A stretch of DNA of 64,000 nt from Zygnema circumcarinatum SAG 698-1b (GCA_037447605.1 CM074810.1:1212880-1276879), one strand, 5' to 3'; shown: positions 9,758 to 55,707, numbered from the stretch's first letter. Made by a program: numbers and translations. The notes: a model not told the origin generated them from the letters alone.

Positions 9758-9805
9758 GTACGGTCAAGTACGGTCAAGTACGGTCAAGTACGGTCAAGTA
9801 CGGTC
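9758..9805. repeat. Tandem 10-mer (CGGTCAAGTA) x4 plus a partial copy
   Basis: Read directly; each junction creates GTAC. Confidence 0.9.
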
Positions 9806-10348: not shown

Positions 10349-13300
10349 ATGGCGCACGCGCGGTCTCTCTCTCTCGCGGCGGCGTTTTTCCTCCTCTGTG
10401 CCGCCGCCGCCGCCCCGCGCGAAGCCGCCGCTCAGGCCATGGACCCGCGAGACAGTGAGCCGCCGCGGCCCGCCCCCCCGCCCTCTATGGACGGGGAGAG
10501 GCGCCCTGCTCGCGTCGTGGCCTCTGTTTGTGCTTTTTGAAGCGGACCGCGGCCTCAATCTAATCCTGCATCTGCTCGCGCTTGGGTGCAGGGGACGCCC
10601 TTCTCGCTGTCAAAGCGGCAATCAACACCACACAAAATCTCTACGGACTTGATCTCACCTCCTGGACTGTGAGTAACCCCGACTGCCGCAATTGGCACGG
10701 GATCGAGGCGTGCGACGCAACCGGGCGCGTTACTGAGATGTGAGCCACACTTTGAATGAACACCGCTTGTGATGTTGGAGGCTCCGCGGATTCCATAGCT
10801 GCAGAGCTGCAGCTCGAGGCTGCGAGCAGGGTTCTGCGGGTAGAAGTCTCCTCAACAAGCGGCGAAAAAGGGCCGCCCGGAGCAGTCCTTCTACTGCTTG
10901 CGGCCCTTTCTTCTTCTGACACTCTCACTGCTAACTTGCCTTTGCTAACCTGCCTTGTGCAGACGTTTAGGGTCTTACTTATGTGGAGGAACCATTTCAC
11001 CTGCCATCGGTAACCTGACAAAGTTGACACGTTTGTGAGTGGCTCCATTTCAGAAGGATGCATTCCATGCATGTTTGTGAGTACAAAGTGATACGGAGGG
11101 CTCAAATGTTGGGACGTGCTAAATTAGTAGAAGCACTGAACCACTCAGCGGCCTCGCTACCTGTAATGCGTGTTCGCACCATGGCTCGGCTGCACATGCA
11201 CAAGCTTCAAGTTTACGATGACGCGTCACGTTTACGTGGTGTATTGCAGCTACTTGACTCCGTTCCTTGCAGCATTCTTTCCACATGAGTTTTCCATTTT
11301 GCTGGAAATATCGGCCAGACTCGTTGAGCCTTTTTTCTTTATTTTTGGCAGATACTTGCATTTGAATTCCCTAACGGGGTCTATCCCGGATTCTATCGGC
11401 AACCTTGCGAATCTGCTAACATTGTAAGTATTTTTCCCCATAAATCTGAAATGAAAGTCATAGGAATGCCAGTGATAGAAATGCTAGTCGTGGCAGCATG
11501 TTTATTCAGTGCCCTATTTTTTTTTTTTTTTTGGCAGAGACTTGTCTTCTAATTCCCTAACGGGGTCTATCCCGGATTCTATCGGCAACCTTGCGAATCT
11601 GCAATACTTGTAAGTAATTTTCCCCATAAATCTGAAATGAAAGTGATAGAAATGACAGACAGAGGAATGCCAGTGATAGAAATGCTAGTCGTGGTAACAT
11701 GTTTATTCAGTTCCTATTTTTCTTTATTTTTGTGCAGATCCTTGTCTTATAATTCCCTAACGGGGTCTATCCCGGATTCTATCGGCAACCTTATGAATCT
11801 GCAATACTTGTAATTAATCTTCCCCATAAATCTGAAATGAAAGTGATAGAAATGACAGACAAGGGAATACCAGTGATAGAAATGCTAGTCGTTGCAGCAT
11901 GTTTATTCATTTCATATTTTTTCTATCTTGGGCAGGTACTTGGATTTCAATTCCCTAACAGGGTCTATCCCGGCTTCTATCGGCAACCTTGCGAGTCTGA
12001 ACGAATTGTAAGTATTTTTCCCCATAAATCTGAAATGAAAGTGATAGAAATGACAGACAGGGGAATGCCAGTGATAGAAATGCTAGTCGAGGCAGCATGC
12101 TTATTTAGTGTCTATTTTTTTTATTTTGGCAGATACTTGGGTCCCAATTCCCTAACTGGGTCGATTCCGGCTTCTATCGGCAACCTTTCGAATCTGGAAA
12201 AATTGTAAGTATTTTTCCCCATAAATTTTAACATGAAAGTGATAGGAATGCCAAATAGAGGAATGCCCGCGATAGAAATGCTAGTCGTGGCAGCATGCTT
12301 ATTTAGTACCTATTTTTTTTTTTTTTGGCAGAGACTTGGGTCAGAATCCCCCAACAGGGTTTATCCCGGCATCTATCGGCAACCTTGCGAGTCTGAACGA
12401 ATTGTAAGTATTTTTCCCCATAAATCTGAAATGACAGTGATAGAAAAATGCCATACAGAGGAATGTCAGTAATAAAAATGCTAGTCGTGGCAGCACGCAT
12501 ATTTAATGCCCCCCCTTTTTTTTTTTGGCAGACGCTTAGGTTCTAATTCCCTAACAGGGTCTATCCCGGCTTCTGTTGGCAACCTTTCGAATTTGGAAAT
12601 ATTGTACGTATTTTACCCCATAAATCTGAAATGAAAGTGATAGAAATGACAGACAAAGAATTGTCAGTGATATAAATGCTAGTCGTGGCAGCATGATTAT
12701 TCAGTTTCATTTTGTTTTTTTGGCAAAGTCTTGGCTTCCAATGCCCTAACAGGGTCCATCCCGGATTCTATTGGCAACCTTGCGAATCTTTATTATATGT
12801 AAGTATTTTTCCCTTAAATCTGAAGTGAAAGTGATAGAAATGCCAAACAAAGAAATGACAGTGATAGATTTTTTTTGTCGTGGCAGCATGTTTATTCAGT
12901 GCCTTTTTTTCTATTTTTGGCAGGGGGTTGGGTTCTAATTCCCTAACGGGGTCAATTCCGGATTCTATCGGCAACCTTACGAATCTGCAATACTTGTAAG
13001 TATTTTTCCCCATAAATCTGAATTGCCAGAGATAGAAATGTCAGACAGAGGAATGCCAGTGAGATAAATGCTAGTCGTGGCAGCATGTTTATTCAGTGCC
13101 TTTTTTTTTTTTTTGGCAGGTACTTGGATGATAATTCCCTAACGGGATCGATCCCGGATTCTTTCGGCAACCTTGCGAACCTGCTAGAATTGTAAGTATT
13201 TCTCCCCTTTAATCTTAAATGAAGGTGATAAAAATGCCAAACAGAGAAATAACAGTGATAGATTTTTTTTTTTTCTGGCAGCATGTTTATTCAGTGCCTT

Positions 13301-15066
13301 TTTTTTTATTTTTGGCAAAGCATTGTCTTCTAATTCCCTAAAGGGGTCTATCCCGGATTTTATCGGCAACTTTGCGAATTTGGAAAGATTGTAAGTATTT
13401 AAGAAGCTGAAAGCCCCTCGCCCCGTATCAGATCGCACTGACGTGTCGAGAATCTTCCAACCAATCACGTCGCAGTGTTAGATACGCTTCAGATTCTTCC
13501 CTGCGCCCCTCCTGATCCGATCCCTCCGCTGTCGTACTGCACTCTCGCACTTCCTCCCTGCCGGTGCCAAGGGGTACAGGAGAGATGGAGGAGAGAGAAA
13601 GAGAGAGAAGTGAGGGAGAGAGAGAGAGTGAGGGAGAGAGGGAAAGGGAGGGAGGGAGAGACAGAGAGAGCACCTCCGGGCAGAGCGCATTCACACGGAT
13701 CCCATGGTCGGTTGGCACGTGACAACTCCGAACTTTGGTTTGCATTTGAGCAATCATTCAACCGAGTTTCAATTTTTTTGTTTTTTCTTGTCGCAAAACA
13801 TCCGCCGAGCTAGTGAGGCTTTTTATGAATATCGGTGGATGCTAATTCACATGCAAACGTTTTTGTAATTCTGAGGGGCATCATCCCGAACACTATTGAG
13901 AACCTCGTGACTTTGTATAATTTGTATGCCATTTTTTCTGAAATTATAAGTGCAATGACCTATTGCATCTTGCAAAAGCAGCAACTTTCGATGTTGTGTA
14001 TCCATGATTGAGTGGTAAATCTTTGCCGCGTAGTTGTTTTCACTTTTGGTGTTTATATACGAGTAAAATTTTATTCTCGCACTGCTATTTTGTGAGACTG
14101 CGTTTTGAGAATTCGACTATAAAACGTGGAGTTGAATACCTGATTTATTCATGTTCAGTCCAGAACCAACCTTATCCTTTTTGTTTAATTTTTTTTCGTT
14201 TTGTATGTCTGTAGGTTTTTGAGCAGCAACAAACTGGAGGGGAGAGTGTCCGGCTTCATCTCTAAACTCACCAAACTGTACTACTTGTAAGCACCGCTGC
14301 ATCGATAACGTTATATTTTCAGTTTCAATTTTTTCTCTCGGCCGAGCATTTGTATCGCTCAAACTATTGCATTTATTTCGCGCTTGCATGAGTTTTAAGT
14401 TTATCTCATATTTTTGGTCACTTCTGTCACGGCGCTGACTTTTTTGACGCACAATACTGCGCACTTTTGCATGCGAGAGATTAGACTTCGTTGTTGAGAG
14501 TTTAGGATTTAGAATTTACGGATTAGGGTTACGGTTTAGGCTTAAAGATTGTAAGTCTTAAAGTTTGAGGGGTTCAGGGGGAAGGGATAAGTCTCCGTTC
14601 AGAGACTTTGCAGACAGCACAAGCGAATTTTTTCAGTGGCTGTGACACAAGGAAGACTTGAACGGGGTCTGTTGGAAAGTTCCTCTCTCTCTCTCTCCCC
14701 CTCTCTAACGCGCCACCTTTAATGTCATCAGGTGGTTAGACAACAACAAGTTGACTGGCTCCATAAGTCTTGCGAGCTATAGCCCTTATGACGGGTACTT
14801 TTGGTTTCAAAACAACTACTTCTCCGGGCCAATCGACATTACATATAATGGGCAACCTTATTGCGTCTTCAACTTTACCAATAACTGCATTTATCGCAAT
14901 ACCACAGGATGTGGCGCAGCTCAATATCAGAGACCTCAACAAGAGTGCGCGGCCTTCTGCCAAAGCGGTGCTCCCAAGGGAGCGTGCGGGGGCCGCGGCA
15001 CGTGCGGGTATGACACGGCCATGTGTACATGCGACAAGGGATATGCGCTGGCATCGAACACGTGTG
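10349..15066 (+). CDS. 5' part of secreted multidomain gene: signal peptide, LRRNT cap, single-LRR 72-nt exons, LRR C-cap and EGF-like domain; exons 10349-10454, 10592-10739, 10963-11034, cassette array, 14215-14286, 14732-15066
   Basis: MAHARSLSLAAAFFLLCAAAAA signal; DALLAVKAAI..SWTVSNPDCRNWHGIEACDATGRVTEI (plant LRRNT); repeats of xLxxNSLTGSIPxSIGNLxxLxxL; WLDNNKLTGSI..NNYFSG..CGGRGTC..CTCDKGY. The locus continues into an N gap. Confidence 0.88.
11352..13390 (+). repeat. Array of 11 tandem exon+intron cassettes (~197-bp period), each with one 72-nt LRR exon starting at 11352, 11538, 11738, 11936, 12133, 12332, 12532, 12727, 12924, 13120, 13319
   Basis: Introns are highly similar (gtaagtatttttccccataaatctgaaatgaaagtgatagaaatg..ctagtcgtggcagcatgtttattcag..polyT..ggcag). 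All exons are 72 nt and phase 2-2. Units 8 and 11 have CAA in place of the CAG acceptor. Confidence 0.95.
13857..13923 (+). pseudogene. Degenerate LRR pseudo-exon
   Basis: Reads LRGIIPNTIENLVTLYN then tt|gtatgc donor, but is only ~67 nt, is frameshifted at its 5' end and is preceded by CAA. Confidence 0.55.
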
Positions 15067-15549
15067 GTGATTTGCAACCTGCTGCTTGTAGATACTTGCA
15101 AGAAAGGAAAAGTAAAGGGTGGCATAGGTTGTGGAAACTATTGCATTGCTATCAATATGATTCGGCCAATAGAAGAGGTTCAATTCTCGAACTTCTAGAA
15201 GCATATCGCAAGTATTACTTGGTGAACTCTGCAATCTCATTCAGTAAATGGCGCAGAGTTTGTAAGGATGTATCGAGAGTGCCGCTCCGACATCATGTTT
15301 GAAAATTTTGATAATCTTCTTGACCCATTCAAATCGCGTGCAAGCTACAACATATGTCGGCTCTATTTGCAGTAGCTAGATATCCTGCGAATTTGACCTT
15401 GCTGCTTTTCAAAGGAAAAATTGCGTAGCTCGAGAAGTGACAAAGGGATCTGATTTGCTGTGGAGATGTATAGCCTGAGAGGCACATAGATGATAAAATG
15501 TCACGTCAAAAGACTTGAAGTAAGTTTACTTTCTTCGGAATGGTTTCGA

Positions 15550-15649
15550 NNNNNNNNNNNNNNNNNNNNNNNNNNNNNNNNNNNNNNNNNNNNNNNNNNN
15601 NNNNNNNNNNNNNNNNNNNNNNNNNNNNNNNNNNNNNNNNNNNNNNNNN
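15550..15649. other. Assembly gap (100 N, true size unknown)
   Basis: N run; it lies where the papain N-terminal half with the catalytic Cys is expected. Confidence 1.
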
Positions 15650-15752
15650 GTTTGGGATTGATACATACATACCTTGATTTCTGAAGTGGTATTCTGGAAA
15701 GGTCAATGCCTTTGACTAAATGTTGCATCCGTCATGTTCCGTCAAAATGCAG

Positions 15753-18700
15753 GAAGTTAGGGTACGCATTCTGTCATACGAGAGTGTCCAGGTGAACGGC
15801 TGGCTTGGCCTTTTGCTTGCTCTCCAGCAACAGCCAGCAGTGGTTGCTATCGAAGCAAGTTCTGACAGTTTTTTGAACTACAACCCCGCAATGGTAAGCG
15901 TAGTTAGTGACTGATTCTGATCTCTAAACACATAAACAACTCGAAAGAAAAGGGAAAAAAAAACTTGCAAGTTCAACTTGCAAACTGTTTTCAATGGGAT
16001 GTGTCATTTTCATTGAGTATGTGACAGAAGATAACACATTCAAGCTTATACACAAAACAGAAAAATCTCAGAAGATCATCATAAAACTCAAAAAACTTTA
16101 TTTTATAAATGGGGGGGGGCTGAATACAAAATCACTTCAATCTTTCTCCTCTCTTCTCTCTTTCTTGTCTTTCTTTTTTTCTGGTCTTCAACTACTGCGC
16201 AGCGCTTCTTTTCTACTCACTGTCTATGCATCTAGAACATTCCTTTCTGAATCCTGTTTCTTGAAGCTCATGTCTCTTCTCGTCCTCTTCGCACATTCCT
16301 GAAAGTTCTCACACGTGCAATCTTACGCATCCACGTGCGATCCTACATATCCGTACAATTTCTGTACACTTGTCGTACATCATTCCGTGCAATGTCCGTA
16401 CAACTCGCAGCATCATCTATCACAGAGTAAAGGCATAGTAGCTATTTTGATGTACAACTGCATTTGTTTTTTTTTTTTTGCTCAGCAATGCTGTATGTTC
16501 TTCCTGCTGCAGGGAGTGTTCGATGACGAGGAGTGCTTTTCCGACGGTGTGGATCACGCCGTGGTCGTTGTGGGATACGATTTGACGGCTGCGATCCCAT
16601 ATTGGATCATCCGCAATTCCTGGGGACCCAACTGGGGGGACAAAGGGTACATGTACATGAAGGTGACGGGGGGATACGGAATTTGCGGCATCAATGTTAG
16701 ACCGCCAATTATACCAATCGTTCAACTTCCTGGTAGGAATGAATGCCAAGTGTCTGGTGATGCTTTGAATCAGGCACTGCTGGCTTTTATCGTTTCCTTG
16801 GGTGATTGAAGCTGAAGATGCCTTTATAATCTTTATCAGATTATAGAAGCTAGCAGTCTGCTGAGAATCTCTGTTCAGCTGGATGCATTGCATGCATGTC
16901 GGGATGGCTGGGGAAGGCCTTCAGTCTTTCTTGAAATTGACTTTAAGTCGTGAGAGAATCTAACTGTAGAAAGTCCCGTCGCCCAAAATATTTCTTTCGC
17001 TGCAATTAGCCTTCAACGTTGTAAACATTATACAAACATGCCGCGAACTGGAGTTTCAAACCCAAATATCATTTTGGCAAAAGTGCTCCGTCCATGCAAA
17101 AACTAGCATCGTGGCAAGAAGGGTTTTGAACGTTTCAGAATCGAGTTTCTGTGGCCTAACCATTTGGAAGAAAGCAGTACCACTTGACCACCACAGCAAG
17201 CAGTTTATCTCTTCTACTTAGTTTCCTTTCTTCATGAGCTGTGCAGCAAGTGATCCTTGCAACCTCTTCAGCTTCACCCGCCGAATTCTCCGGTTGGCGT
17301 ACGGACCGGGGCAGATGAACCCCTGCGGGAACGGAGTCTGCTTTCCTTCACTTTCCGGCACAACAAATGTTTGCGAATGTGCTGACAACTTTGTTAACGT
17401 TACGAACTCAGACGGAACGCAGACGTGTGCACCCGGTAAAAAAAAAAAAAGAAAAAAAAAAAAATGTCTACGAAATGATTTGTCCATGAAATGCCTACGC
17501 TTATGCTTTTATTCAATATTCTACATGTAGACTACGCACGTATCGACTCTGCTGGAAAAATAATTTACACTGCATCTGTCCTCGTGCAGCTGAATCTCCA
17601 AATCAAGGGCTACAGACCACAGTGTTCCAAGTTGAAGAGTGACCTTTCTTTCTTTGCTTCGTGATAGCTTTACATTTATTATTTCTGATCTCCTCTTGTG
17701 ATTCCGCTTCACGCCCTAATGCCTTACGCCTGATTGCCACGTGGCAGCGTCTCCATGCACGTTCACATCACGGAATCCGTGCGGCGTGGGCACATGCGTG
17801 GACAACGCAGCGCTCAACGGAACGTACATGTGCATTTGCCCTCTCGGCTATTCGCCGGACTCGTCCGAAGAGGCTCTCACCTGCCTCCCCGGTCCGCACC
17901 CGGCAGACTCGCAAACCCGGTTCAAACGTATATAGATATAGGCATACAGGCATTGATACGATAAGATATGTAAGGTATAGGCATTGTTTGCCTATATCTT
18001 CAAACATTAAATAACTGAAATTTTCGAAGGTTTACGAATACAATTTTGAAAATTTTGTTAATTGAATGTGTTTAAAAATTGGTTGACTTCATCGTCGTCG
18101 TTCTTTAAATTGCAGCTGTCCTTTTAGGTGGACGTCTACTGAGCTATACTGTCCCAGTGAATACCAGTTTACCCTGCACAAGTCTGTACGGAACATATGG
18201 CATACCCAAGGCAGTGCACAAAACAAGGTCAGTTCAAGGACTTGCTGCTAACGCATCGTGCTGAAAAGATATGGAAAGGAAAGCACGTTTCTCTTTCGAT
18301 TCAAGCAACTTTTGTGTGCAAAATATTTTGGTCTTGTTGGAAATCTCTCACCACGAAGCGCCATGTGATTCCTTGCGTGACATAAAACCAACTCTCTGCA
18401 CCCCTCTCCCTCTCCCTCCATTTCAGGGTCTGAACTGCAGCAGTCCCCTTCCGGGAGGCACTGTTGTGAATGTGACGAGTGCGAGCAACTGCTCCGTCAC
18501 GTATGCACTGGAGGAGGTCAGTGCTAATTCGAATGCTAATAATGATGGAAACAGTCAGCAACAACACGTAGATTTTCAAAAACGACGAGCAGGACCCGTA
18601 GACTGCCTACCTTACAGCCTCATAAGAAAGCATGGATCTTCATATACTCGTGTTCTGTATAATGATTATATCGTAGTACCGAGATTACTGCTGTTTGAAG

Positions 18701-19980
18701 CGGCGCTCTAAAAGTAGACATTTTCTTACTGGTGAGCGCAGGGAGACACGTGTACCTCCGTGGAGCAATTGTTTAACATCACAGCCCTGTCCGGCCCCAC
18801 CTCTCCGAATCCGGACTTGGACTGCTCACAGCTGCAGCCATATCAGCAGGCAACACTCTTTCTTTCGCTCTCCTTAGGGCAAATTAAGCCTTAAAGTCGA
18901 AAATTATGTTAGCGGTCTTGTTCTATGCTTCGTTGAGAAGAAGCACATTCAATTGCATATCCAGTCCACAGCCCCATAGTGCAGAATCTGACTGCTCCCA
19001 TGGCGTACGGTCCTGTGCAGGTCTGCATTCGAAGGGGAGAGCTCGCCTACCCGGGGCCGTGCAGTCGGCTGTACAGCGTGCAGCTGAACGACACGTGTGT
19101 TTCCATAATAAGCGGACTCATGGAGGGTGACGCCATCAAGTTTTTCACGCTAAACCCGGGTTTGTACTGCGGCCAGTTGCAGCTGTCGTTCAATGCCAAC
19201 AGCGATCTCAGTCGACAGGTAATGATCCCCCGTCCTTTTTTGCGTCTGCATGGCCGGGTTGAAATTAGGAGCTTGTGAGGCTAGTCATTGGCACAACCTT
19301 AAGCTTGCAGCACTCTCGAGGAGAGGAGAGAATGTCTATCAAACTTCACAATCACGTTAGAGTGTCCACTGCTTTCAGGATGTTGATTCAGATTTGACTG
19401 ATGATGTTGATGGTTTTGGACTAAGAGTAGTACAATGGGCATTTCGCCAGGCTAAGCCAAAGCGTTGCGAAGCAAGGTAGACTTTTCCTTTTGTGAAGTG
19501 ATCCTTCCAAGCTCCCGCCCGTTCACCCTCCTCGATCGTTTTTTTGTTTCGTTTTCCTTGTCGCGTATAAGCAGTTTTTTCTTGGGTCCAAAGGACTCTT
19601 ATCCAAGTCCTCGTCTAAAGGTTGCCAACGTCTGTTCTGATTTTGCTGCATTCAAATATCGGATGCTTTTCATGCCACTGGAAATCTCCGTTTCCTCTTC
19701 TTTTTCAAGATTCATCTTTCTTCATCCGACTGCTTCTTGCTTTCTGCAGGTGTGCCTTGAAGCGGCGGATTTGGGCCTGGGAAAGGGCTGCAAAGGGAGA
19801 CCTCACAAGCTGCAGGCGGGTGACTCCTGCATCAGTTTGAAGGCGTGCTTTTCAAAGAAGGAGACGTTCAAGAAGTTTAACAACGGCACGTCCTGCACTA
19901 AGAAGCTTCTGGAGACCCTCCGGGCGAAGGACACGACCGCGGCCAAAGTCTGCGTCCCGACAAGCAGCAAGTGCACGTAG
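15753..19980 (+). CDS. 3' part: papain-family (C1A) protease C-terminal half, 2 EGF-like domains, 4 Cys-flanked LysM domains; exons 15753-15893, 16513-16732, 17247-17435, 17748-17891, 18116-18227, 18427-18516, 18742-18849, 19021-19218, 19750-19980
   Basis: QQPAVVAIEASSDSFLNY; catalytic His and Asn in VDHAVVVVGY..YWIIRNSWGPNWGDKGY; EGF NPCGNGVC..CEC and NPCGVGTC..CICPLGY; LysM-like YALEEGDTC..NPDLDC..QQVCI, YSVQLNDTC..FFTLNPGLYC, HKLQAGDSC..VCVP. No transmembrane segment seen. Apparent frameshift in LysM1. Confidence 0.85.
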
Positions 19981-21568
19981 GCATGCGACTTTTGTCGCAT
20001 GCGAGAGCGGCCCATGGGGCGCGTGACGCCTCTCCTCCCTCGGCAGTTTCAGAGGAGGAGGCGGCGGTCAAACTTAGTATGGGTATGGCTCTACTGTAGT
20101 GCGCGTACCTGCACATGCATGGCATGATGAGGGAGTGGACGCACCATGGCAGTGGCATGCATAGGGGATGCATAAAGACACGCTTGGGGGATGCATGGAT
20201 GGATGGATTGTTCGTCGTCGGCTTTCGTTTCTCGTTGGCATTGCGTCGTCATGCAGACAGTCGATCCCGGCGTTTGGTTGGACAGCAGACCGTGATTAAA
20301 CGCGTTTCAAACATTGAGATATGTGACAAGCTGAAAATTGTGCTAATGAATGTTATGAGCTGCCTTTGGTCAGAAGTTGGAACATTTTCATCTTCATGTT
20401 GGTTTCTGGCACTGCGGGTCGATCTGCTTAACGGAGAATGGGCCGGGCCGGATTAGGGCGAGCCTGGGAAAATGAGCTCTTTTCATCAAAGGATTTTGCC
20501 ACGTGGACCATTCCTGCATTGACACGTGGCAGTGAGTCGGCCAGGCTCGAACCGAGCACTGGCGGGCTTCAAATAGGGCACTGCCGGGCGGGAGTCTTTG
20601 TCATATCAGCCCAGAGACGTGCCGTACAGGGTACGGATCGCAATTCCCGACAACAATGGGAGGGGCGCCACGTGCCGCCTTCGAGGCGCTTTGAAAAATA
20701 TAAAAAAAAATCTGACCAGTTTCCATGCGAACAGAGATTTCTCCTACTGAAGTCAGTTTGATCTGGTTACAGATAACATTTTGTACGGCCGTGGAAAGCC
20801 ACGGACGTACAAAATGTCGATCTTGGCCCGCCGGCGCGCCACGTCGGATAGCACAAAACTGGTTAGCCACGTGCCGGTTTCCAATTTGCTGATAGCTCCT
20901 CGCCCGGCGGTCACGTCACGCCACGCCACGGCGGGTCGTTGGCTGCGACTGCAAGCCGGCACCGCGCGCGGCCCCGAGATTCGTGACGGGTCTTCAGAAG
21001 CGACGTGGAGGCGCTCGATTGGAGAATGCCCGTGTTCCAGTCAAACGGGGTCGTTTGGGCTAGTCGAGGTCGCCACGTCAGCAACCTCACACGCCCTGAA
21101 AGATCCCGGACCCGCGGATCGCTGCAGATCTGTTCCATATTTTTCAGCCATTCAATCGGTCGTATCACTGCCACCCTTCCCACGAGGAAGATCTAGAATC
21201 GGATCTCAGCAAGATATCCATGGCTCTATGACTCAGCAGTAGATTTTTATATCCGGCCATAGAATCTACAAATCACGTATTCCAGGCGACCAGCAACCAA
21301 TAGCCGTCAGTACTGGAAGGCTGTTTTTACCTCACCATATCTGAATAGAATCTCAGGAGGATCTATAAGGGCTCCAGCCGGGTCCGAGAATCTCTGACTA
21401 GATTTGGGGTCCGCGACGAGCCCATCCCGTCCCCGCCCGCGTGACGTCCCGAGTTGCTCCGCGACAACCGACAAAGCGCGCGCGCGCGCGCGACCGTGTG
21501 CCTTTGTGCGGCGGTCCGCCGCTCGTCCTCGCGCCTCGCTCTCGCCTGCCGCTCGCTCTATCCCTGCC

Positions 21569-28803: not shown

Positions 28804-29058
28804 GGGGAAAAATGGCATTTAACTCACGATGGCGAGGCCATCATTTTACATGGACAAAAGCAGCACGGGGAACCACGAGGAGCACATGAAAGCCAACGCT
28901 AATAAGAGAACTAGAATTCGTTTGGAGTCAATACGCAATACGCTTCTATCTTTTGTCCTTAGGTCCTTTGCGACCAGTCCCTCGTGGTTCCACATGCTGC
29001 TTTTGTTCATGTACATTTGTTGGCCTCGCCATCGTGAGTTCAATGACATTTTTCCCCC
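28804..29058. mobile_element. Inverted pair of a dispersed ~80-100-bp repeat family; other copies at ~28725-28780, 32866-32963, 33111-33194, 55237-55342
   Basis: Shared core GGGGAAAATGGCATTGAACTCACGATGGCGAGGCCA..ACATGGACAAAAGCAGCACGTGGAACCACGAGG..GTCGCAAAGGACCTAAG. Confidence 0.75.
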
Positions 29059-29495: not shown

Positions 29496-29948
29496 TAGCT
29501 TCCAGTGCCTGCCTGCATACGCTCCCGCCTGCCTGCCTCCCGCCCTCCGCGCACGCCTGTCAACCCTTGCAGGAGTAACTTTTTTTTCTTCAAGCAGCCG
29601 TTGCAGGACTGTGAGCGCGAACATCTGCCGCAGCGACTCTGTCATATTGCCTTCTTTTTATGTCTGAGCCCATTCCCCCCACACTTCTGTTGGGAAAGTA
29701 TTGTCCCACAGCTCGGAAGAGGCGTAAACTGACAGGCGTAGGTCACGCAGGCGGGGATGGGATAGGCCCGTCTCGGACGCCAAATCTAGGCAGAGATTGT
29801 CGGACTCGGTTCGAGCCTGTCAGATACTCTTGATATTCTATTTAGATATATTAAGGTCACTAGAGACTTGCATTACTGACGGCTACTGGTTGCTGGTCGC
29901 CTGGATCCGTGATTTTTAAAAACCCTGAAAACCAATCCATTTTTCGCG

Positions 29949-32012: not shown

Positions 32013-34745
32013 GGCGGAGCTATTAGGAGACTGGCAGGGAAGTTGAACGTGTGACTATGACTAGGAGAGTCACTTTGGAGATGTGAAAACGTTGCAGTTG
32101 GTCTCTCATCAGACATGGTAGAGGTGGAGCTTGGTCTGGAGGCCTTCAAACTGTCTTGCGAATGTCAAGTCAACTTGTTGCTTTCTAAGAGCCATGCGGC
32201 AGAAATTTCAATGCATTGTGTCGGATGCTGAGTTTGACTGCTGTGCAGGGATATGGTGGGTGGGATGGAGGGAGGGTGGGAGGGAGGGAGGGACATACAA
32301 CCCTTCAACCTCGTTTGTATCTACTGGGAATGGAAGGGCCCTGCAACTGCTGCTCTGGGGAGTTCTGTTTCATTTGTGTGTATGCATTTTCAAAATTCTC
32401 TCGTGTTCGAATTCGCGCATGCAAACCACCAGTCATCCAGTTTACTGAAACTGATGTGTCATGTATCTTAACGACTGTTCATTTTCTTATTTGTCTTTTG
32501 TACTGTTAATGTTCAATGATAGCGTACCTCACCGACGCAAGTAAATGTTGTCAACTTGCTTTCCTTAGGTGAGAATTGCCTTTTGAACGTTTTCCCAAAA
32601 GTAGAACACTGCGTTGTGAGAGTTGTGCGCACACGGTATTTTGGGTATGAGTTGTGTTCTGCCGTCTAAAGATATACTCCTGACTTGAATCTTATCATAC
32701 ACTGCGAGACGAAATCTAAAGATATTTTGTGCATTTGAAGTTAACGATACACCGCGATACGACTCTTTTAGTATACGGTACACTGCCCCTTTGAATTGTA
32801 GGATACACCGTTATACGACATCTCAGGATCTCATCTCAGGATAAGCGGCTTATTTGAAGACTACTGGGGAAAATGGCATTGAACTCACGATGGCGAGGCC
32901 ATCAAATGAACATGGACAAAAGCAGCACGTGGAACCACGAGGGACGGGTCGCAAAGGACTTAACCACAAAAGGAAAAAGCTAGGAGCAGAAAACTATGCC
33001 TAGACTCAACAACGCAGGCCTCCCTAGAAGCAGCAGCGAAGGTCACCGATGTTTGAGAATATTGTGTGATAGGAAATCTAAGAATACACTCAATGCTCAT
33101 TCTCTATAGGAGGAGAGAAATGCCATTGAACTCACGATGGCGATGCACCAAACGTACATGGACAAACACCAAGGTGGAACACGAAGGACCTAAGACTGAA
33201 GATTTGAGAGTTAGAGAGTTAGAGACTTATGAGTGTTCTCAGACTCTGGTTTGATTATGGAGGGGAGCATGAGAAGCAGATCTTAAGACGATTGTGCTTC
33301 TGAGTGGGGAGAAGCATTCAGAAGTCGCTACTCTGCCGTATGGCAAGCTCCTGAAATTGCGAGTTGTTGCCGAGACTGTGAAACACGGCGAGGAGAGTGC
33401 GGATCTACTAGGTGGGGGCGGAGTGTTCTTTAAGCTGACGGGAACCGTTTCAGATGGACATGATTCCAGCTGCGATGAGTTTGTTTTTTCGTGTTTTTTT
33501 GTGATTTCTGGAGTCATGCTATTATGATCACTATGTTCGTGACTTCACATCCTCTATGCAGCAGGGAATGCGCATCAATTGCAACAAAGTTGGTCTCGCC
33601 CGTGACCCCCCCTCCCCACTCCCCCCACCCCCATGCCCCTCGTCCCTCAGCACCTCTTTCTTTTTAGCTACGGGGTTCCCCCATGCCCCAAGTCCCCTTG
33701 CGCCCCTTTCCTTTTAGCTACGGGTTCCTCTCCACCCCACCCTTCCGCCACGCCCCCTGTTCGCCTGCCCCCTCCCCCTTCCCCCATTCCAGAATTTGTT
33801 GCTTTGTGTTGCCTTAGAAGGTCCGTGAGGCACTTTGGGCCCAGCTGCCAGCTGCCAGTGCTCAGGTGAGCGCACCAGATTCAGCGCCGGCTTTGGCCCA
33901 ATCTTGTATTCTCAAATGAGGAATTTCTACAAGGAGGTTATATTTCAAAAAGACCTGGAAAAGCCGTTCAACCGCCTCTCGCCTGCCCGGATTTCTGATC
34001 GCTGCAGACGGGTCTGTCGGCGACTGCCCTGCAGGGGCGCGGCTCTGCTGGATGCAGACCCTGACTGGGCTTAGAGGGGAGTTCAGTCTGTCTCGGCGGG
34101 TTCTGCGGATTAGGAGGGGGAATAAGAGGAGGATTCTCAAGGTGAACTTGGTATCGTTAGCACTCGAGGACATAGTGAGGTAGTGGTGGAAACTAGAGTT
34201 AGTCAGCTCTGTTAAATAGTGGACTGCGAAAAAAATATGTAAAAGAGGGGATTCCATTTTCAGACCCGTATAAATAAAAATCGTAAGGAAAATTCCGTAT
34301 CAGATTTTGTCAATTGTACAAAGGAGGTGAAAAATGATATGACAGATGGACTGGGCCTCTACATGTCATTGCTTCCCTTGTTCACAGAACAGATTGAATC
34401 TGACCATGAGGTTAAACTATGCACCTTTTTTCTTGGGTTCCGCCTATCAACTCCTCCCTTGGGGAAGGGAAGCGAGATCCCTAAAACATAGGTAGGCATA
34501 CGAATGTCTCTGCCCTCTATCACTACATGAGTGAAAAAATATACTGCACACGGAAGCATAGCTATACTGCACACATGTAAACCACACACTAAGCCGCCTC
34601 CTCGAAAAACCGACAAACGAACACCCGAAATGAGCCTGCTGCAAGCCATGGCCCAAAAGCATACCTATAAAAGCTGCTGCTTGCAGCCTTCCCTTTCCAG
34701 TCCTTGCCACACCAACGAAATGGGGGCCGTGCGTACCCCCTCGGG

Positions 34746-37242: not shown

Positions 37243-37706
37243 GCTGCTGAACAGAGCATGGCAGCCCTCCGCACCACTCCTGCTTCCATTTGCTGCACCC
37301 TCACACGACTGCCTGCAGCAGCCCCCACCCCCGCGCCATATGCGCTAGGCTTTATATTATTACAGCAGACTTCAATGGTGGACAGAAGCAAGCATCGAAG
37401 GAAATGTGTGTGAGAGAGTGAGAGACAGGGAGCGAGAGAGAGAGGAGAGAGAGAGGAGAAGCGCAGGTCGGGAGAAAAACAACCCTTGCCATCGCGAACT
37501 TTTTAATTGTCGATGGTTGTCCAATGAAATCCTGCCACGTGTAAAAAGTGTCGACGTGGCGTTCCGCCAGTGGACGACGGTCGGCCATAGTTTGGCAGCG
37601 GAGGGAGGGCCCTGGAAGGGAGACAAAAGGAGAGGCTCCCAGGCCTCGTCCAAGATTCACCGTCCTTGCATTAGTTTAGAAACAGTATCCTGTCGTATTT
37701 TTCAAA

Positions 37707-38657
37707 GGGTAGTGATATTTCCACCCCTTTTTTGGATCCAAACACCCCTTCCCGGCCGGGCAGATTTCAAAAAGGATTAAAAACGGAAAATGCTTTTTTC
37801 ACACCTTTTTGGAATCGATACCCACCCTCCATCGGCAGATTTTTTTTTTGCGAAACAAGGAAATAACCCGTCAACCCATTTTGAATATCCCGCCTACCTG
37901 AATTTTTTTTCACGCGTGCGGTCAATCGCAGCCGTCGATCCATTCGCAGATCGCAACACGGCAGATCACTATTTGCTCTGCAGCCGGGCTCGGTCACAGC
38001 GAATGGCACGTGCCCACGTATCCCGCCAAACTCGTCTCAAATGTTGTCCGTACAAATTTCGTACGGTCGCAACTTTGAGGAACCCAATATTTCGTACATT
38101 GAGAGCTTGGACCCAATCAACGTGTTCCACGTCCAAAAAGTAACACATGGCAGATGTTGATTGGCTGAAAGCTGGCAATGCACGAGATCTCGGGCCGAGG
38201 GACACGCGCACTCGCACGTGTCCCTCGGCCCGGCTTTGGCGGGACTCGTGGGCGCATTCCATTCGCTAAGATTGAGCCCGGCTGCAGATCGAACGGTGAT
38301 TTGCAGTGGTGTGATCTGCGAGGGAATCGACAGCTGCGATTGACACACACGTGTGAAGGACGGACACCCGCGAACGATCTCGTGGCGGACGGATCTTCCG
38401 CTCCGAGCGGATTCGAGCAGGCAGAAATTTCTTTCCCTCAAAAAAACAAATCAGGGAGGCGGGATACAGTATTCAAAAGGCGGTGACGGGGTATCATTTT
38501 CCTTGGTTAGCAAAAATAAAATCAGCCGACGGATGAAGGTGGGTATCGATCCCAAAAAGGTGTGAAAAAAGCATTTTCCGTTTTTAATCCCTTTTGAAAT
38601 CTGCCCGGCCGGGAAGGGGTGTTTGGATCCAAAAAAGGGGTGGAAATATCACTACCC
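37707..38657. mobile_element. Non-autonomous long-TIR (Mutator/foldback-like) DNA transposon, 951 bp, 8-bp TSD TTTTCAAA
   Basis: GGGTAGTGATATTTCCACCCCTTTTTTGGATCCAAACACCCC.. is matched in reverse at the right end almost perfectly for ~120 bp and imperfectly to ~290 bp. Direct repeat TTTTCAAA on both flanks. No coding capacity. Confidence 0.92.
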
Positions 38658-39108
38658 TTTTCAAAATTCGGTTTTATGATAACAAGGTACTGATACTGTT
38701 TTGGGTTTGTCTTGAAACCAACTGATCGTCACCTAGATCACGCGCCTCCAACAGAAATTGGATAGTCTAAAGTACACAGTGTACGGCACTGTACATAATT
38801 GTACGGTTACGTACGGCCTCATTGTGTACAGTACAGTACAGTACCGCACGTAACTGTACGAAATAACAGCATAGTTCAGTTTACCGTGATGTGTAACTCT
38901 CACACATGTGACATCTGCGACGAAAATAAAAAGAAATAAAGACAAAGTTTTAGACTTCAAACTTGTGGTTACAAACCGAGTTCACGAGTGGCAACCTGAG
39001 TTTTCAAAGGTACAAACTCGAAAATTGTCCTCGAAGCAGCGAACAGGTCGCACCAAACGGGGTACAGCGGACAGGGCGGGCAGCCGGAGCGGGAGCTGCG
39101 TGGAAGCC

Positions 39109-42100
39109 ATGGCGGGCGCCGCGGGCGTGGAGCAGGAAGCAGCTATGGAGGGCAAGCAGGAGGAGGCCGTCACAGAGGGCGTGCAGCAAGATGCAGTCTC
39201 GGGGTATGCAAAGGAAGAGGTAGCCATGGGCGGAGACAAGCAGGAGACAGCCATGGAGGGCGTGCAGCAAGATGCTGTTGCGGAGGGCGCAAAGGAAGAG
39301 GCAGCCCTGGACGGAGTCGAGCAGGAGACAGCCATGGAAGGCGTGCAGCAAGATGCTGTTTCGGAGGGCGCAAAGGAAGAGGCAGCCATGGACGGATTCA
39401 AGCAGGAGACAGCCATGGAGGGCGTGCAGCAAGATGCTGTTTCGGAGGGCGCAAAGGAAGAGGCAGCCATGGACGGATTCAAGCAGGAGACAGCCATGGA
39501 GGGCGTGCAGCAAGATGCTGTTTCGGAGGGCGCAAAGGAAGAGGCAGCCATGGACGGAGTCAATCAGGAGACAGCTATTGAGGGGTTGCAGCAAGATGAT
39601 GTTTCGGATGACGTAAAGGAAGAGGCAGCCATGGACGGATTCAAGCAGGAGGCAGCCATGGAGGTCGTTCAGCAAGATGCAGTTTCGCAGGGCGCAAACG
39701 AAGAGACAGCCATGGACGGAGTCAAGCAAGACACAGTCATGGAGAGCTCGCAGCAAAATGTTGTCCTGGTCCGCGCTTTGCAGGAGGTCGCCACTTTGCT
39801 ACCCGAGGTTCGTATGGAGGGAGCGGAACGGACCTCTTTCATCGCCTCTCCTTCAGTCGTTCTCGCTGCCTCTCTCGGCGACTCTGCTGCTGGTCTGGTT
39901 GAGCCGCATCCCGCCCTTGAGAGTCACGAGGGTGACGGGATTTCCACGAGGGCGGAGGAAATAAGCTCTCGTGTTGCGCTGGAGCTGCGGGGAGGGGCGG
40001 ATGATGAGAAAAAGGTAGTCGAGGAATTGGAACAAGAATCAAAATTTTCGGCCCCTCCAGCCATGGAAAAGAGAGGCGCAGAGGGGAAGGAGGGAGTAAA
40101 TCCTCTCGTGCATTTCTCGCTAAAGGAGCTTGAGGTATCGGTCAATGAAAAGGAAAGGGTGAAGGAGGAACAAGGTTCTTTGCCCTTTCTAAACGCGGTG
40201 GAGGACAAAGTAAAGGGCCGTATTCCTGAAGAAAATCCCCTCTTGGAGAATTCTGAGGATCTCAGTGACGCAAAAATTGAGGCGTCGACTGGTGGTAGCA
40301 TGGTACAGGGAAAGAAGAAAGACGAGGAGGACGTTTGCTTTATCTGTTACGACGGGGGTGACCTAGTCGTCTGCGACAGGAGGTGAGGCTCCACAGAATG
40401 CATAGGAAGCTTTTTTTTCTTTCAGTGCCGTCTTAGCTATGATTTTTAGCGTACATCGTTTTCAATGAAGTACTTGGGGCTTGTTTTTAACTTTTCTTAT
40501 GTTTTCTTGAATAGCAAACAAACCTCGTTTGGGATTGTTTTTTTGGAACTGGAATCGTAAGAATTGAGTAAAGAGTTTATTTGCGGTTCCTTTGAAGGGA
40601 CTCTAATTTGTTTTAAGCTTGTGAGGCTAACGATCAAAGTCAGTGATCATTACCCTTGGTCACTGCTTATTCTCAGTTGTTGGTTGGTCCGTCGATTAAA
40701 TCACTTCCTTTTGCCGTTCCAGTAGTATGCTTGCAACTTGAAGTGCAAGAAAATGTGACCTTGCTCATGGGTTAGATTTGTGCCAGCTGCTTTATTGAGG
40801 GTTTCAAGACACTGGAATGTGTAGAAACAAAACAAAACAAGTTTGAGCCAACTTAAGAACACTATTGAAAGTATCTTGCACTCTTTTTTCCTTCGTTGAT
40901 TTGCCGCAGGTCGTGCCCGAAGTCTTATCACCTAGAATGCTTAGACAGCCCGCCAGATTTATTTGTCAGCGGTGGGAATTGGCACTGCGGTTAGTTTTTC
41001 TATGCTCTATCCCTTTCTAACATCGGTTTTGGCCAACTCGCATGTCAACTTTTTTACTTGAGCAATTTTACAGAATTTTTTTCCTTTTTTATTTGCAGCT
41101 CTGCTGCTTTGGGTATTCGAGTCTAGCTTAGCATGTTATGTATGCTGCTGCAGTTGAGGCTGGGTTCATTCGCCTTGTCAATAATTTTAACGATAGAGAG
41201 GAGGTTTTCACTAGTCGTTTATAGGTAATTCGGTTAGTAAGCCTCCAAGAGCCTTTCAGATAGTCATCGTAAATCTATATCCTTAATAAAAAACTTTACT
41301 ATTTGTGCATGGATTAATCATTGCAGAGGTAACTAGAAAACACAAAAACAAACATTTCTGTAACATCCATCTGCTTGTGTTTGCTGCATTTTTGGTGGCG
41401 CGAAGATAGATGCTCCTCTCCTTACAGAGATGTTTGTGTTTGTGTTTTCTATTAAGGACAATTTTGTGTTTACTCGATGGTTTTTGAACTTTTTGAAAAG
41501 TCCTTGAGAACAGTAGCATTCTGAAGGCATTGTTCGAAGGCTTTTTTTGACAGTTGTTGTTGCAACAGACTGGCATTGTTGCAGGACATGCAAGAAAGCA
41601 GCGATCATCCAGTGCCAGACTTGCTTGTGGGCGTACTGCCAAGTTCATTACAACGAGGAAGGAGGAGATTGGTTTCGCTTTGACCGTCGAAAGGCCCTTT
41701 GCGACGATTGTTTTCCTCTTGTCAAAATCCTTGAGAACTGTGAAAGCTTTGGGCCTGATGGGGTAAGATGCTGCCTATTCCTTTCTTTGTTGCCATTTCT
41801 TGTAAACAGGTTGACCACAGAAACAAGAGAGTGGCTTTGGTTGCTGTGTTTAGTGAATCAAAGCATGGCTTTTTTAGATTCTTGACATGGGTCTACAATT
41901 TGTTTATACTTTGTTCATTTTATTTGTTCGTAAGTATTTAATTTGTGTAAGTTGGTGTTGCTTTTTCTGTGTTTGTGGGTCTCTCTAATTTTCGTCGCTG
42001 TCATCCTGCTGAGCTTTGCAGAAGAAGATTGATTTCGACGATCCTGATACACACGAGAACTACTTTAGAGAGTATTACATAACTTACCATCAAAAGAAAT

Positions 42101-53871: not shown

Positions 53872-54816
53872 GAGGGGGAGGGGAAGAGGGGAAGAGGGGA
53901 AGAGGGGAAGAGGGGAAGAGGGGAAGAGGGGAAGAGAGGGGACGGGAGGGGACGGGAGGGGCCGGGAGGGGCCGGGAGGGGACGGGAGGGGACGGGAGGG
54001 GACGAGAGGGAGGGGACGAGAGGGGACGCGAGGGGACGGGAGGGGACGAGAGGGGACGAGAGGGGACGGGAGGGGACGAGAGGGGACGGGAGGGGACGGG
54101 AGGGGACGGGAGGGGACGGAAGGGGAGAGGGGACGAGAGGGGAGAGGGAACGCGAGGGGACGGGAGGGGACGAGAGAGGGGACGAGAGGGGACGGGAGGG
54201 GACGAGAGGGGACGAGAGGGGACGGGAGGGGACGAGAGGGGACGAGAGGGGACGAGAGGGGACGAGAGGGGACGGGAGGGGACGAGAGGGGACGAGAGGG
54301 GACGGACGGGAGAGGGGAGGGAGGGGACGGGAGGGGACGAGAGGGGACGAGAGGGGACGAGAGGGGACGAGAGGGGACGAGAGGGGACGAGAGGGGACGA
54401 GAGGGGACGAGAGGGGACGAGAGGGGACGAGAGGGGACGGGAGGGGACGAGAGGGGACGGGAGGGGACGGGAGGGGACGGGAGGGGACGGGAGGGGACGA
54501 GAGGGGACGGGAGGGGACGAGAGGGGACGAGAGGGGACGAGAGGGGACGAGAGGGGACGAGAGGGGACGGGAGGGGACGAGAGGGGACGAGAGGGACAGG
54601 GGACGTCAGGGGACGTGAGGGGACGAGAGGGGCCGGGAGGGGACGGGAGGGGACGAGAGGGGACGAGAGGGGACGGGAGGGGACGGGAGGGGACGAGAGG
54701 GAACGGAAGGGGACGGGAGGGGACGAGAGGGGACGAGAGGGGACGGGAGGGGACGAGAGGGGACGAGAGGGGACGAGAGGGGACGAGGGGGAGGCGGGGA
54801 GGGGGGGAGAGGGGGA
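53872..54816. repeat. G-rich minisatellite: (GAGGGGAA)n followed by about 85 units of GGGACG[A/G]GAG
   Basis: Read directly; almost no T on the + strand. Confidence 0.97.
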
Positions 54817-55707
54817 GCCGCGTCCACATGCATGTGTCGTTCACAGTTCCGACATTTCCCGTTCCATGACAGTGGTCATCACAACCCGCTCACATGCTCG
54901 ACAGTTCCGTTCCGTCGCTGGTCATGCGGTGACCTGGTCGGGACGTGTGAACCTCTACGCGACAAAAGCGCCGCCCTGCCAAGGCCGGGGCCGGGCCTCC
55001 ATGCGCGGGTTCAACGGCGGGTCCGGGATCCACCGGGCCGCGCTTGGCCGACGTGGCGCCTACTTGGCAGCCACGTCCGAGTAGATTCTACTCCAAAAAC
55101 GAGGCGGATCCACAAAACGTTGATTGGAATATCCAATCGCGCGTCGCCACGTAGCTACAAAACAGACCCTCTGCGGTAGAACCATTCACCCTCTGTTTCT
55201 GGTTGAAGGAAATGGACGGTTTTTTTTTTTTTTTGAAGTGGCATTGATCTCACGATGGCGATGATGCCATCACATGTACATGGGCGACATCAGCATCATG
55301 GAGAAGGAACCACGAGGAACAACTGGTCGCAAAGGACCTAAGCACAAAAGTTGCAGTTGCGGGAGCGGTTGATTGTACCTCGGCCCTCGTACAACGGTGT
55401 CGCCGTGGGTGGGAGGATGAACGGGAAACTTAGTACCATGGCGCCATCCAAGAGCAGATGCAATTTTAGCAGACAACATCGTCTTATTGTGTAAAGTATG
55501 TGTGTGAGTGTGTTTAAGACTTTCACATGCATTGGCCAAGTAAGGACCCACACAGAATGAACAGAATTCCAATTCATTTCCAAAAGCAGACTCTTGTTGC
55601 AAAAAAAAAGGGGTGAAAAACCTGCTGCACAACGCGGCCTTGACTACTTATTGACTACTAGTTATAGTCATTCGGTCACAAAAAAAGGGCTCTGAAGAAC
55701 ATTGGAG

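What the first reader, a model, noticed from the sequence alone, without database searches (positions are those of the whole stretch)
11352..13390. Cassette array of single-LRR exons with hypervariable ligand-facing residues straddling each splice junction
Seen: 11 near-identical ~197-bp exon+intron units. The scaffold NSLTGSIPxSIGNL is nearly invariant. Exon starts differ (YLHL, DLSS, SLSY, YLDF, YLGP, DLGQ, RLGS, VLAS, GLGS, YLDD, ALSS) and so do exon ends (LT, QY, QY, NE, EK, NE, EI, YY, QY, LE, ER). These codons often differ at 2-3 bases and look more divergent than the neighbouring intron. Known: those positions are the x residues of LxxLxLxxN, the concave binding surface of plant LRRs, and LRR exon shuffling has been described in brown algal ROCO genes. 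Inference: the intron splits that strand (xxL|xLxxN) and all exons are 72 nt phase 2-2. Any skipping, unequal crossover or conversion therefore stays in frame and builds a new binding strand from two cassettes, which amounts to a combinatorial diversity generator.
Basis: partly seen in the sequence, partly recalled or inferred. Interest (0 to 1): 0.92.

Follow-up and report, generated by a model that had tools for sequence, protein, structure and literature searches.

The report
Young LRR exon array, dead cassettes
A gene for a secreted binding protein in an alga related to land plants grew by copying one 72-base exon with its intron eleven times; the ligand-facing codons then changed about six times faster than silent sites and two copies lost their splice signal, a real but already familiar way for receptors to evolve, with no sign of an antibody-like diversity machine.

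Summary
There are eleven 72-nt, phase 2-2 LRR exons in ~197-bp units. The five xxLxLxx codons differ at 0.54 per base, against 0.16 in introns; dN/dS is 5.9 there and 0.30 in the scaffold. RNA contigs run unbroken through both, so they are not spliced in; a third, frameshifted remnant follows at 13857-13923. The array lies in a transcribed gene: signal peptide, LRRNT, LRRs, EGF. In one RNA run its last donor (GTGATT) is read through, so a link to the papain-EGF-LysM exons beyond an assembly gap is not shown. DNA depth points to many sister genes with the same exon and intron. The junction that splits the strand is old: it is the published 'type II' LRR exon and is also present in a Closterium homologue. 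Best reading: germline tandem duplication, recombination, diversifying selection and cassette death, as in Ectocarpus ROCO and Tetrahymena LRR genes. I found no evidence of combinatorial splicing or somatic rearrangement, though isoforms of the nine intact exons could not be seen. This scan has noted many such arrays elsewhere in this genome.

The parts
10349..10454 (+). Exon 1, signal-peptide-like leader (phase 1)
   Evidence: sequence; GT..AG joint 10454>10592 in RNA runs only
10592..10739 (+). LRRNT cap exon
   Evidence: spliced zero-difference RNA contig at depth 49
10963..11034 (+). First, divergent 72-nt LRR exon (L0), outside the young array
   Evidence: L0 to array exon 1 splice predicted contig ends 11005-11381 exactly
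11352..13390 (+). Array of 11 exon-plus-intron units, 72-nt phase 2-2 LRR exons, introns 114-128 nt at 84% mean identity
12727..12798 (+). Array exon 8: acceptor CAA, frame intact, not spliced in
   Evidence: RNA contigs 12616-12789 and 12760-12910 unbroken
13319..13390 (+). Array exon 11: acceptor CAA, three scaffold changes, not spliced in
   Evidence: RNA contigs 13276-13477 and 13300-13466 unbroken
12332..12403 (+). Array exon 6: splice sites intact, scaffold damaged (two prolines, S14F)
13857..13923 (+). Older LRR exon remnant: CAA acceptor, 67 nt, out of frame
14215..14286 (+). 72-nt LRR exon b after the array; acceptor used
   Evidence: RNA contig end at 14244 as predicted
14732..15066 (+). 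Last LRR, cap and EGF-like exon; donor GTGATT here, GTGAGT in paralogues; read through in run X7 to a stop at 15300-15302
15550..15649 (.). Assembly gap (100 N, true size unknown)
15753..16732 (+). Two papain-family (C1A) exons, 15753-15893 and 16513-16732; no catalytic-Cys motif in the window; link to the LRR gene not shown
17247..19980 (+). Two EGF-like exons and further small Cys-rich exons (LysM-like by eye only; no Pfam hit for the two tested)

Best explanation
The array is an ordinary, fast-evolving ectodomain of a secreted plant-type LRR protein in a zygnematophyte alga. One exon-plus-intron unit was copied in tandem by unequal crossing-over, helped by an ancient one-LRR-per-exon, phase 2-2 layout (copying shown by shared introns; crossing-over inferred). 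Units later exchanged segments (recombination signal shown). Selection for new binding surfaces fixed amino-acid changes at the five xxLxLxx positions while the scaffold was conserved (rates shown; ligand and selective agent unknown, a microbial or cell-surface partner is inferred). Units also die: exons 8 and 11 and an older remnant lost the acceptor and now lie in introns. The mRNA, where spliced, most likely carries nine array repeats, and diversity arises over generations and across a family of close sister genes, not within a cell.
For: Intron identity 84% among units. Omega 5.9 against 0.30; dN at the variable codons is 5.5-5.8 times dS whichever exon subset is used. Tree-free count: 21 extra alleles at codon positions 1-2 of the variable codons against 6.2 expected from introns, P 2e-6, while scaffold third positions match the intron rate. 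PHI-type test p 0.002-0.07 without the variable sites. Dead acceptors confirmed in zero-difference contigs and never branched in RNA. DNA depth at single positions is 13-57 times this locus's own depth in flanking parts and 110-210 times in array introns (not a copy number). Same register in Closterium. Precedents: PMC3341825, PMC11378527, PMC6564038.
Against: The joints among the nine intact exons were below the display cut of the one reads call, so a single isoform is assumed, not shown. Omega rests on 5 codons in 10 units and on a tree that recombination distorts. No ligand is known.
Confidence: 0.8

Rival explanations
1. Present state of this copy (compatible with the best explanation): it is a transcribed but decaying member of the family. 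Unspliced RNA around the dead acceptors ends the frame early, and the weakened last donor cuts it off from the downstream protease part.
For: Three CAA acceptors, one frameshifted remnant, a damaged scaffold in exons 6 and 11, and a donor change private to this locus. In run X7 unspliced contigs around exons 8 and 11 (depth 35-64) and across 15066 (53) are as deep as the spliced 5' contig (49), while intact introns are at 0-12. Retention of intron 7 or use of the AG two bases on gives a stop.
Against: Skipping exons 8 and 11 leaves an open frame of 460 codons to 15066, or 538 with read-through. Run X11 fits exon 10 spliced to exon b. No stop or frameshift in any of the nine intact exons. Contig depth is a poor measure of RNA level.
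Confidence: 0.4
2. Dscam-like or ROCO-like alternative splicing: intact cassettes are skipped in many combinations, each skip making a new xx|xLxx strand, so one gene gives many binders.
For: All exons are phase 2-2, so any skip is in frame. Exon ends and next-exon starts are uncorrelated (Mantel r 0.07). Ectocarpus ROCO genes give up to nine splice forms (PMC11378527). The splicing machinery can jump exon 11 here.
Against: No skip of an intact exon of this locus was seen; the listed joints carry other codons or exceed this locus's depth and come from paralogues. Where an acceptor is lost, much RNA stays unspliced. No conserved pairing or selector element was looked for beyond the shared intron, and the introns drift at the silent-site rate.
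Confidence: 0.12
3. Programmed DNA-level diversification (lamprey VLR-like copy choice from silent cassettes, or DGR-like targeted mutation).
For: Silent cassettes with intact frames; many sister units in the genome; third positions of x5 and x7 nearly fixed while first and second vary, which recalls DGR codons.
Against: DNA contigs of two samples show the window's order at single depth. Adenines in N9, N21 and the A-rich introns are not hypervariable. Silent sites next to the variable codons are nearly fixed, as selection predicts. No recombinase or reverse transcriptase was recognised by eye among the window's long ORFs.
Confidence: 0.03
4. Assembly artefact: collapsed or jumbled copies of a multi-gene repeat.
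For: Very many look-alike units elsewhere in the genome, and a gap 2 kb downstream.
Against: Zero-difference, single-depth DNA contigs span 11001-11394, 11832-12005, 12070-12401 and 12760-12906, and RNA contigs 12616-12910 and 13164-13583. No listed piece spans the whole array.
Confidence: 0.03

Closest known systems
Ectocarpus ROCO LRR exon arrays and type I/type II LRR exons (PMC3341825, PMC11378527)
   Same: One 24-aa LRR per 72-nt phase-2 exon; recombination among exons; positive selection on the binding face; inactivated exons that lost a splice site.
   Different: Here the exons have the type II register (xLxxN...LxxL), for which Zambounis et al. found no shuffled or inactivated exons in Ectocarpus. 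The protein is secreted, without ROC-COR. Whole exon-plus-intron units are tandem and near-identical, and no inverted intronic exon was found in the window.
Tetrahymena 90-bp-exon LRR genes (PMC6564038)
   Same: Tandem exon-intron repeat units, phase 2 introns, near-identical units across many genes, unequal crossing-over.
   Different: 72-nt plant-type repeat; no retrotransposon link seen here; far smaller scale.
Plant extracellular LRR receptors and R proteins (FLS2, GSO1, ERL1; xxLxLxx selection in R genes, PMC3113787)
   Same: Same plant-specific LRR consensus and the same five hypervariable x residues.
   Different: No transmembrane or kinase part in this locus; a very young exon-level array; algal host.
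Arthropod Dscam and lamprey VLR (my own knowledge; summarised in PMC11378527 and PMC3341825)
   Same: Arrays of interchangeable modules with variable binding residues.
   Different: No mutually exclusive splicing, cell-to-cell choice or somatic assembly is shown here.

Membership tests
Plant-specific extracellular LRR protein | 24-residue LxxLxLxxNxLxGxIP repeat | tested here: met
Plant-specific extracellular LRR protein | Signal peptide and Cys-pair LRRNT cap | tested here: met
   read from the translation; no signal-peptide predictor was run
Evolutionary LRR exon-shuffling arrays (ROCO/Tetrahymena kind) | One repeat per symmetric phase-2 exon | tested here: met
Evolutionary LRR exon-shuffling arrays (ROCO/Tetrahymena kind) | Recombination among units | tested here: met
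   PHI-type test, (p 0.002-0.07 without variable sites)
Evolutionary LRR exon-shuffling arrays (ROCO/Tetrahymena kind) | Positive selection on binding-face residues | tested here: met
Evolutionary LRR exon-shuffling arrays (ROCO/Tetrahymena kind) | Inactivated exons inside introns | tested here: met
   exons 8, 11 and the remnant
ROCO GTPases | ROC-COR domain | tested here: not met
   downstream exons are EGF and C1A peptidase
LRR receptor kinase | Transmembrane helix and kinase | tested here: inconclusive
   none seen in 10349-19980, but the gap at 15550 hides sequence of unknown length
LRR-EGF-papain-EGF-LysM mosaic (noted only in this scan) | LRR part spliced to a papain domain with catalytic Cys | tested here: inconclusive
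   order and strand fit, but the Cys exon is absent from the window and the donor is read through in X7
Dscam-type combinatorial splicing | Many alternative isoforms from intact cassettes | tested here: inconclusive
   low-depth joints not displayed
VLR-type somatic assembly | Cell-to-cell DNA rearrangement from donor cassettes | tested here: inconclusive
   no sign in DNA contigs, which drop rare variants
Diversity-generating retroelement | Adenine-specific change, template repeat and reverse transcriptase | tested here: not met
   adenines in N9, N21 and introns are not hypervariable

The most novel reading that the evidence does not exclude
This alga keeps a genome-wide pool of one interchangeable LRR cassette (tens of genes, perhaps hundreds of units). 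Acceptor-less copies serve as reusable donors, and skipping or exchange builds new binding strands fast enough to act as a recognition repertoire on secreted LRR or LRR-protease proteins in the sister group of land plants.
Probability: 0.12. Interest if true: 0.75.

Novelty: new member of a known kind. Interest (0 to 1): 0.3.

Why it matters
As it stands, it is a clean example of birth, diversification and death of LRR cassettes in a close algal relative of land plants. One small addition to the literature I could search: inactivated, reshuffled exons in the type II register, which were not found in Ectocarpus. I found no paper on such arrays in Zygnematophyceae. Young units with matching introns give a built-in neutral yardstick for selection. 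It would matter much more if long reads showed many isoforms or fast turnover between strains, because that would give plants' algal sisters a cassette-based recognition repertoire.

Tried and rejected
Metagenome search with an intron word: no match. Protein searches with single exons found no close relative: best 30-49% identity, named hits from Mesotaenium and Closterium; the tool's length limit makes those blanks weak. P0006 had no contig on record. Sister arrays could not be fetched as DNA, so they rest on read depth and on unchecked notes of this scan. Import of old, diverged conversion tracts as the cause of the variable codons was rejected, because silent sites beside them (L6, N9, L1 third positions) are nearly fixed. 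DGR-like mutation was rejected. A common origin of the two CAA acceptors is neither shown nor excluded: the introns before exons 8 and 11 are not close (distance 0.24), and G>A at CHG sites is about twice as frequent as elsewhere in these introns (0.11 against 0.05; that count includes the two acceptors), so repeated mutation is plausible. Two paper searches for the plant one-LRR-per-exon layout returned nothing. No structure was predicted.

Full report
Observation. Tandem Repeats Finder gives a 198-bp period, about 10 copies, over 11448-13400. Parsing gives eleven 72-nt segments starting at 11352, 11538, 11738, 11936, 12133, 12332, 12532, 12727, 12924, 13120 and 13319. Each is one base, 23 codons and two bases, so phase 2-2, with the intron inside the L4 codon of LxxLxLxxN. 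The ten internal introns are 114-128 nt and differ by 0.16 per site on average.

Variability. Five codons (x2, x3, x5, x7, x8, the x residues of xxLxLxx) carry 5-7 amino acids each among 11 exons. Diversity there is 0.54 per base, against 0.16 in introns and 0.12 in the rest of the exon. These positions are defined in advance as the solvent-exposed strand residues that are positively selected in plant R genes (PMC3113787). A tree-free count gives 21 extra alleles at their first and second positions against 6.2 expected from introns (P 2e-6); scaffold third positions match the intron rate and scaffold first and second positions are below it. A codon model on a fixed tree gives omega 5.9 (p 0.01 against 1) for these codons and 0.30 (p 0.001) for the scaffold. 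Pairwise estimates are the same when the dead or damaged exons are left out. Silent sites beside the variable codons are nearly fixed, which favours selection over import of old tracts. Caveat: five codons, ten units, and recombination inflates tree-based values.

Recombination. Neighbouring informative sites are more compatible than shuffled ones, also without the variable sites (p 0.002-0.07 by window size). Exon ends are not correlated with the next exon's start (r 0.07) or with their own start (r 0.08); reshuffling or saturation would both give this.

Exons 8 and 11 have CAA where the other nine have CAG. A third, older exon remnant at 13857-13923 also has CAA and is 67 nt, out of frame. 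Exon 6 has two prolines in the scaffold and exon 11 three scaffold changes. The next AG, two bases on, would shift the frame and stop translation; skipping 8 and 11 keeps an open frame.

The gene. Upstream lie a signal-peptide-like exon (10349-10454), an LRRNT exon (10592-10739) and a divergent LRR exon (10963-11034). Downstream lie LRR exon b (14215-14286) and an LRR-cap-EGF exon (14732-15066), then a 100-N gap, two papain-family exons, two EGF-like exons and small Cys-rich exons. No catalytic-Cys motif is in the window. The repeat matches plant receptor ectodomains such as GSO1, FLS2 and ERL1. Named relatives of the cap-EGF exon are from Mesotaenium and Closterium, and a neighbouring eIF5 is 62% identical to Mesotaenium's. 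The host is therefore probably a zygnematophyte. Zygnema circumcarinatum fits the genome size (71 Mb, PMC11096116), but this is an unverified inference.

Reads (one call, contigs only). Runs X7 and X11 behave as RNA, since they hold a GT..AG joint absent from DNA runs X3 and X5. DNA contigs at single-copy depth match pieces of the array with 0-2 differences, so the array is not an artefact locally; one of these samples may be the window's source. Contig ends can be read as splice marks, because a spliced and an unspliced form break a 31-mer graph at predictable places. The L0-to-exon-1 splice predicts an intron contig 11005-11381, exactly what X7 shows. Contigs run unbroken through both ends of exon 8 (X7) and of exon 11 (X7 and X11), so these are not spliced in at a level the assembly kept. 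An X11 contig starts at 13164, which fits exon 10 joined to exon b (or c) and none of the other acceptors tested, and another ends at 14244, which fits use of the exon b acceptor. In X7 the unspliced pieces around the dead exons (depth 35-64) are as deep as the spliced 5' contig (49), while intact introns are at 0-12. The donor at 15067 reads GTGATT here and GTGAGT in paralogues; X7 reads through it, which would end the protein at 15300-15302, before the papain exons. Paralogue mRNAs splice there to proline-rich exons. These are inferences from contig geometry; contigs drop rare forms, and the low-depth joints among the nine intact exons were not displayed.

Sister arrays. At 90% likeness, DNA depth at single positions is 13-57 times this locus's own depth in flanking parts and 110-210 times in array introns. 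This is no copy number, but it points to many close sister genes with the same unit; their mRNA junctions carry other variable codons (table 5c). Notes of this scan describe many such arrays on other pieces of the genome and a family of LRR-EGF-papain-LysM genes. I did not check those loci.

The split strand. Zambounis et al. describe the same register as 'type II LRR exons' in Ectocarpus kinases (PMC3341825). A Closterium LRR-EGF homologue has 72-nt exons cut at the same codon, and the tandem-repeat scan showed no exon-plus-intron repeat there. The junction is thus an inherited gene layout. It allows new strands to form after skipping or a crossover in an intron, but it is no evidence that this is done on purpose.

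Mechanism. Shown: tandem copying of the unit, past recombination, diversifying selection on the binding face, loss of cassettes by acceptor mutation, transcription. Inferred: unequal crossing-over as the copying route, a nine-repeat array in the spliced mRNA, and a microbial or cell-surface ligand as the selective agent (confidence 0.8). This copy may itself be decaying (0.4). Combinatorial splicing (0.12), somatic diversification (0.03) and artefact (0.03) are less likely.

Comparison and verdict. It works like the Ectocarpus ROCO arrays, including inactivated exons, and like the Tetrahymena 90-bp-exon genes. It is not a ROCO gene, and a Dscam-, VLR- or DGR-type system is not shown. What is slightly new is the lineage and the dead cassettes in the type II register. 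New member of a known kind; interest 0.3. The joined spliced model was not sent to any search or folding tool.

Noticed in passing
window 9758-9805: Perfect 10-bp tandem repeat (4.8 copies), each with a GTAC core, about 550 bp upstream of the LRR gene's start; GTAC is the SBP-box core (own knowledge), function untested.
   Followed up: no
window 13401-13975: The long intron after the array holds a GA-rich tract; DNA contigs of paralogues lack 13514-13704 and 13780-13974, the latter about one unit long and containing the exon remnant.
   Followed up: partly
window 15067-15302: Read-through of the weakened donor adds about 78 codons and a stop; an RNA contig of 483 nt runs on from 15026 towards the gap.
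   Followed up: partly
window 15753-19980: Papain, EGF, EGF and Cys-rich exons; the catalytic-Cys exon and prodomain are missing from the window and may lie in the gap.
   Followed up: partly
window 39123-39764: 81-bp coding tandem repeat (7.3 copies, 27-aa acidic unit) in the first long ORF of what looks like a PHD/SWIB/Plus3/GYF/CCCH protein (by eye).
   Followed up: no
window 37694-38670: Inverted repeat of about 229 bp at 87% identity, resembling a MITE or fold-back element.
   Followed up: no
window 53885-54792: Long 10-bp purine-rich minisatellite, about 93 copies.
   Followed up: no
window 28804-29057, 32866-33189, 55236-55350; 21267-21445 and 29742-29918: Short dispersed repeats in several copies and both orientations.
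   Followed up: no
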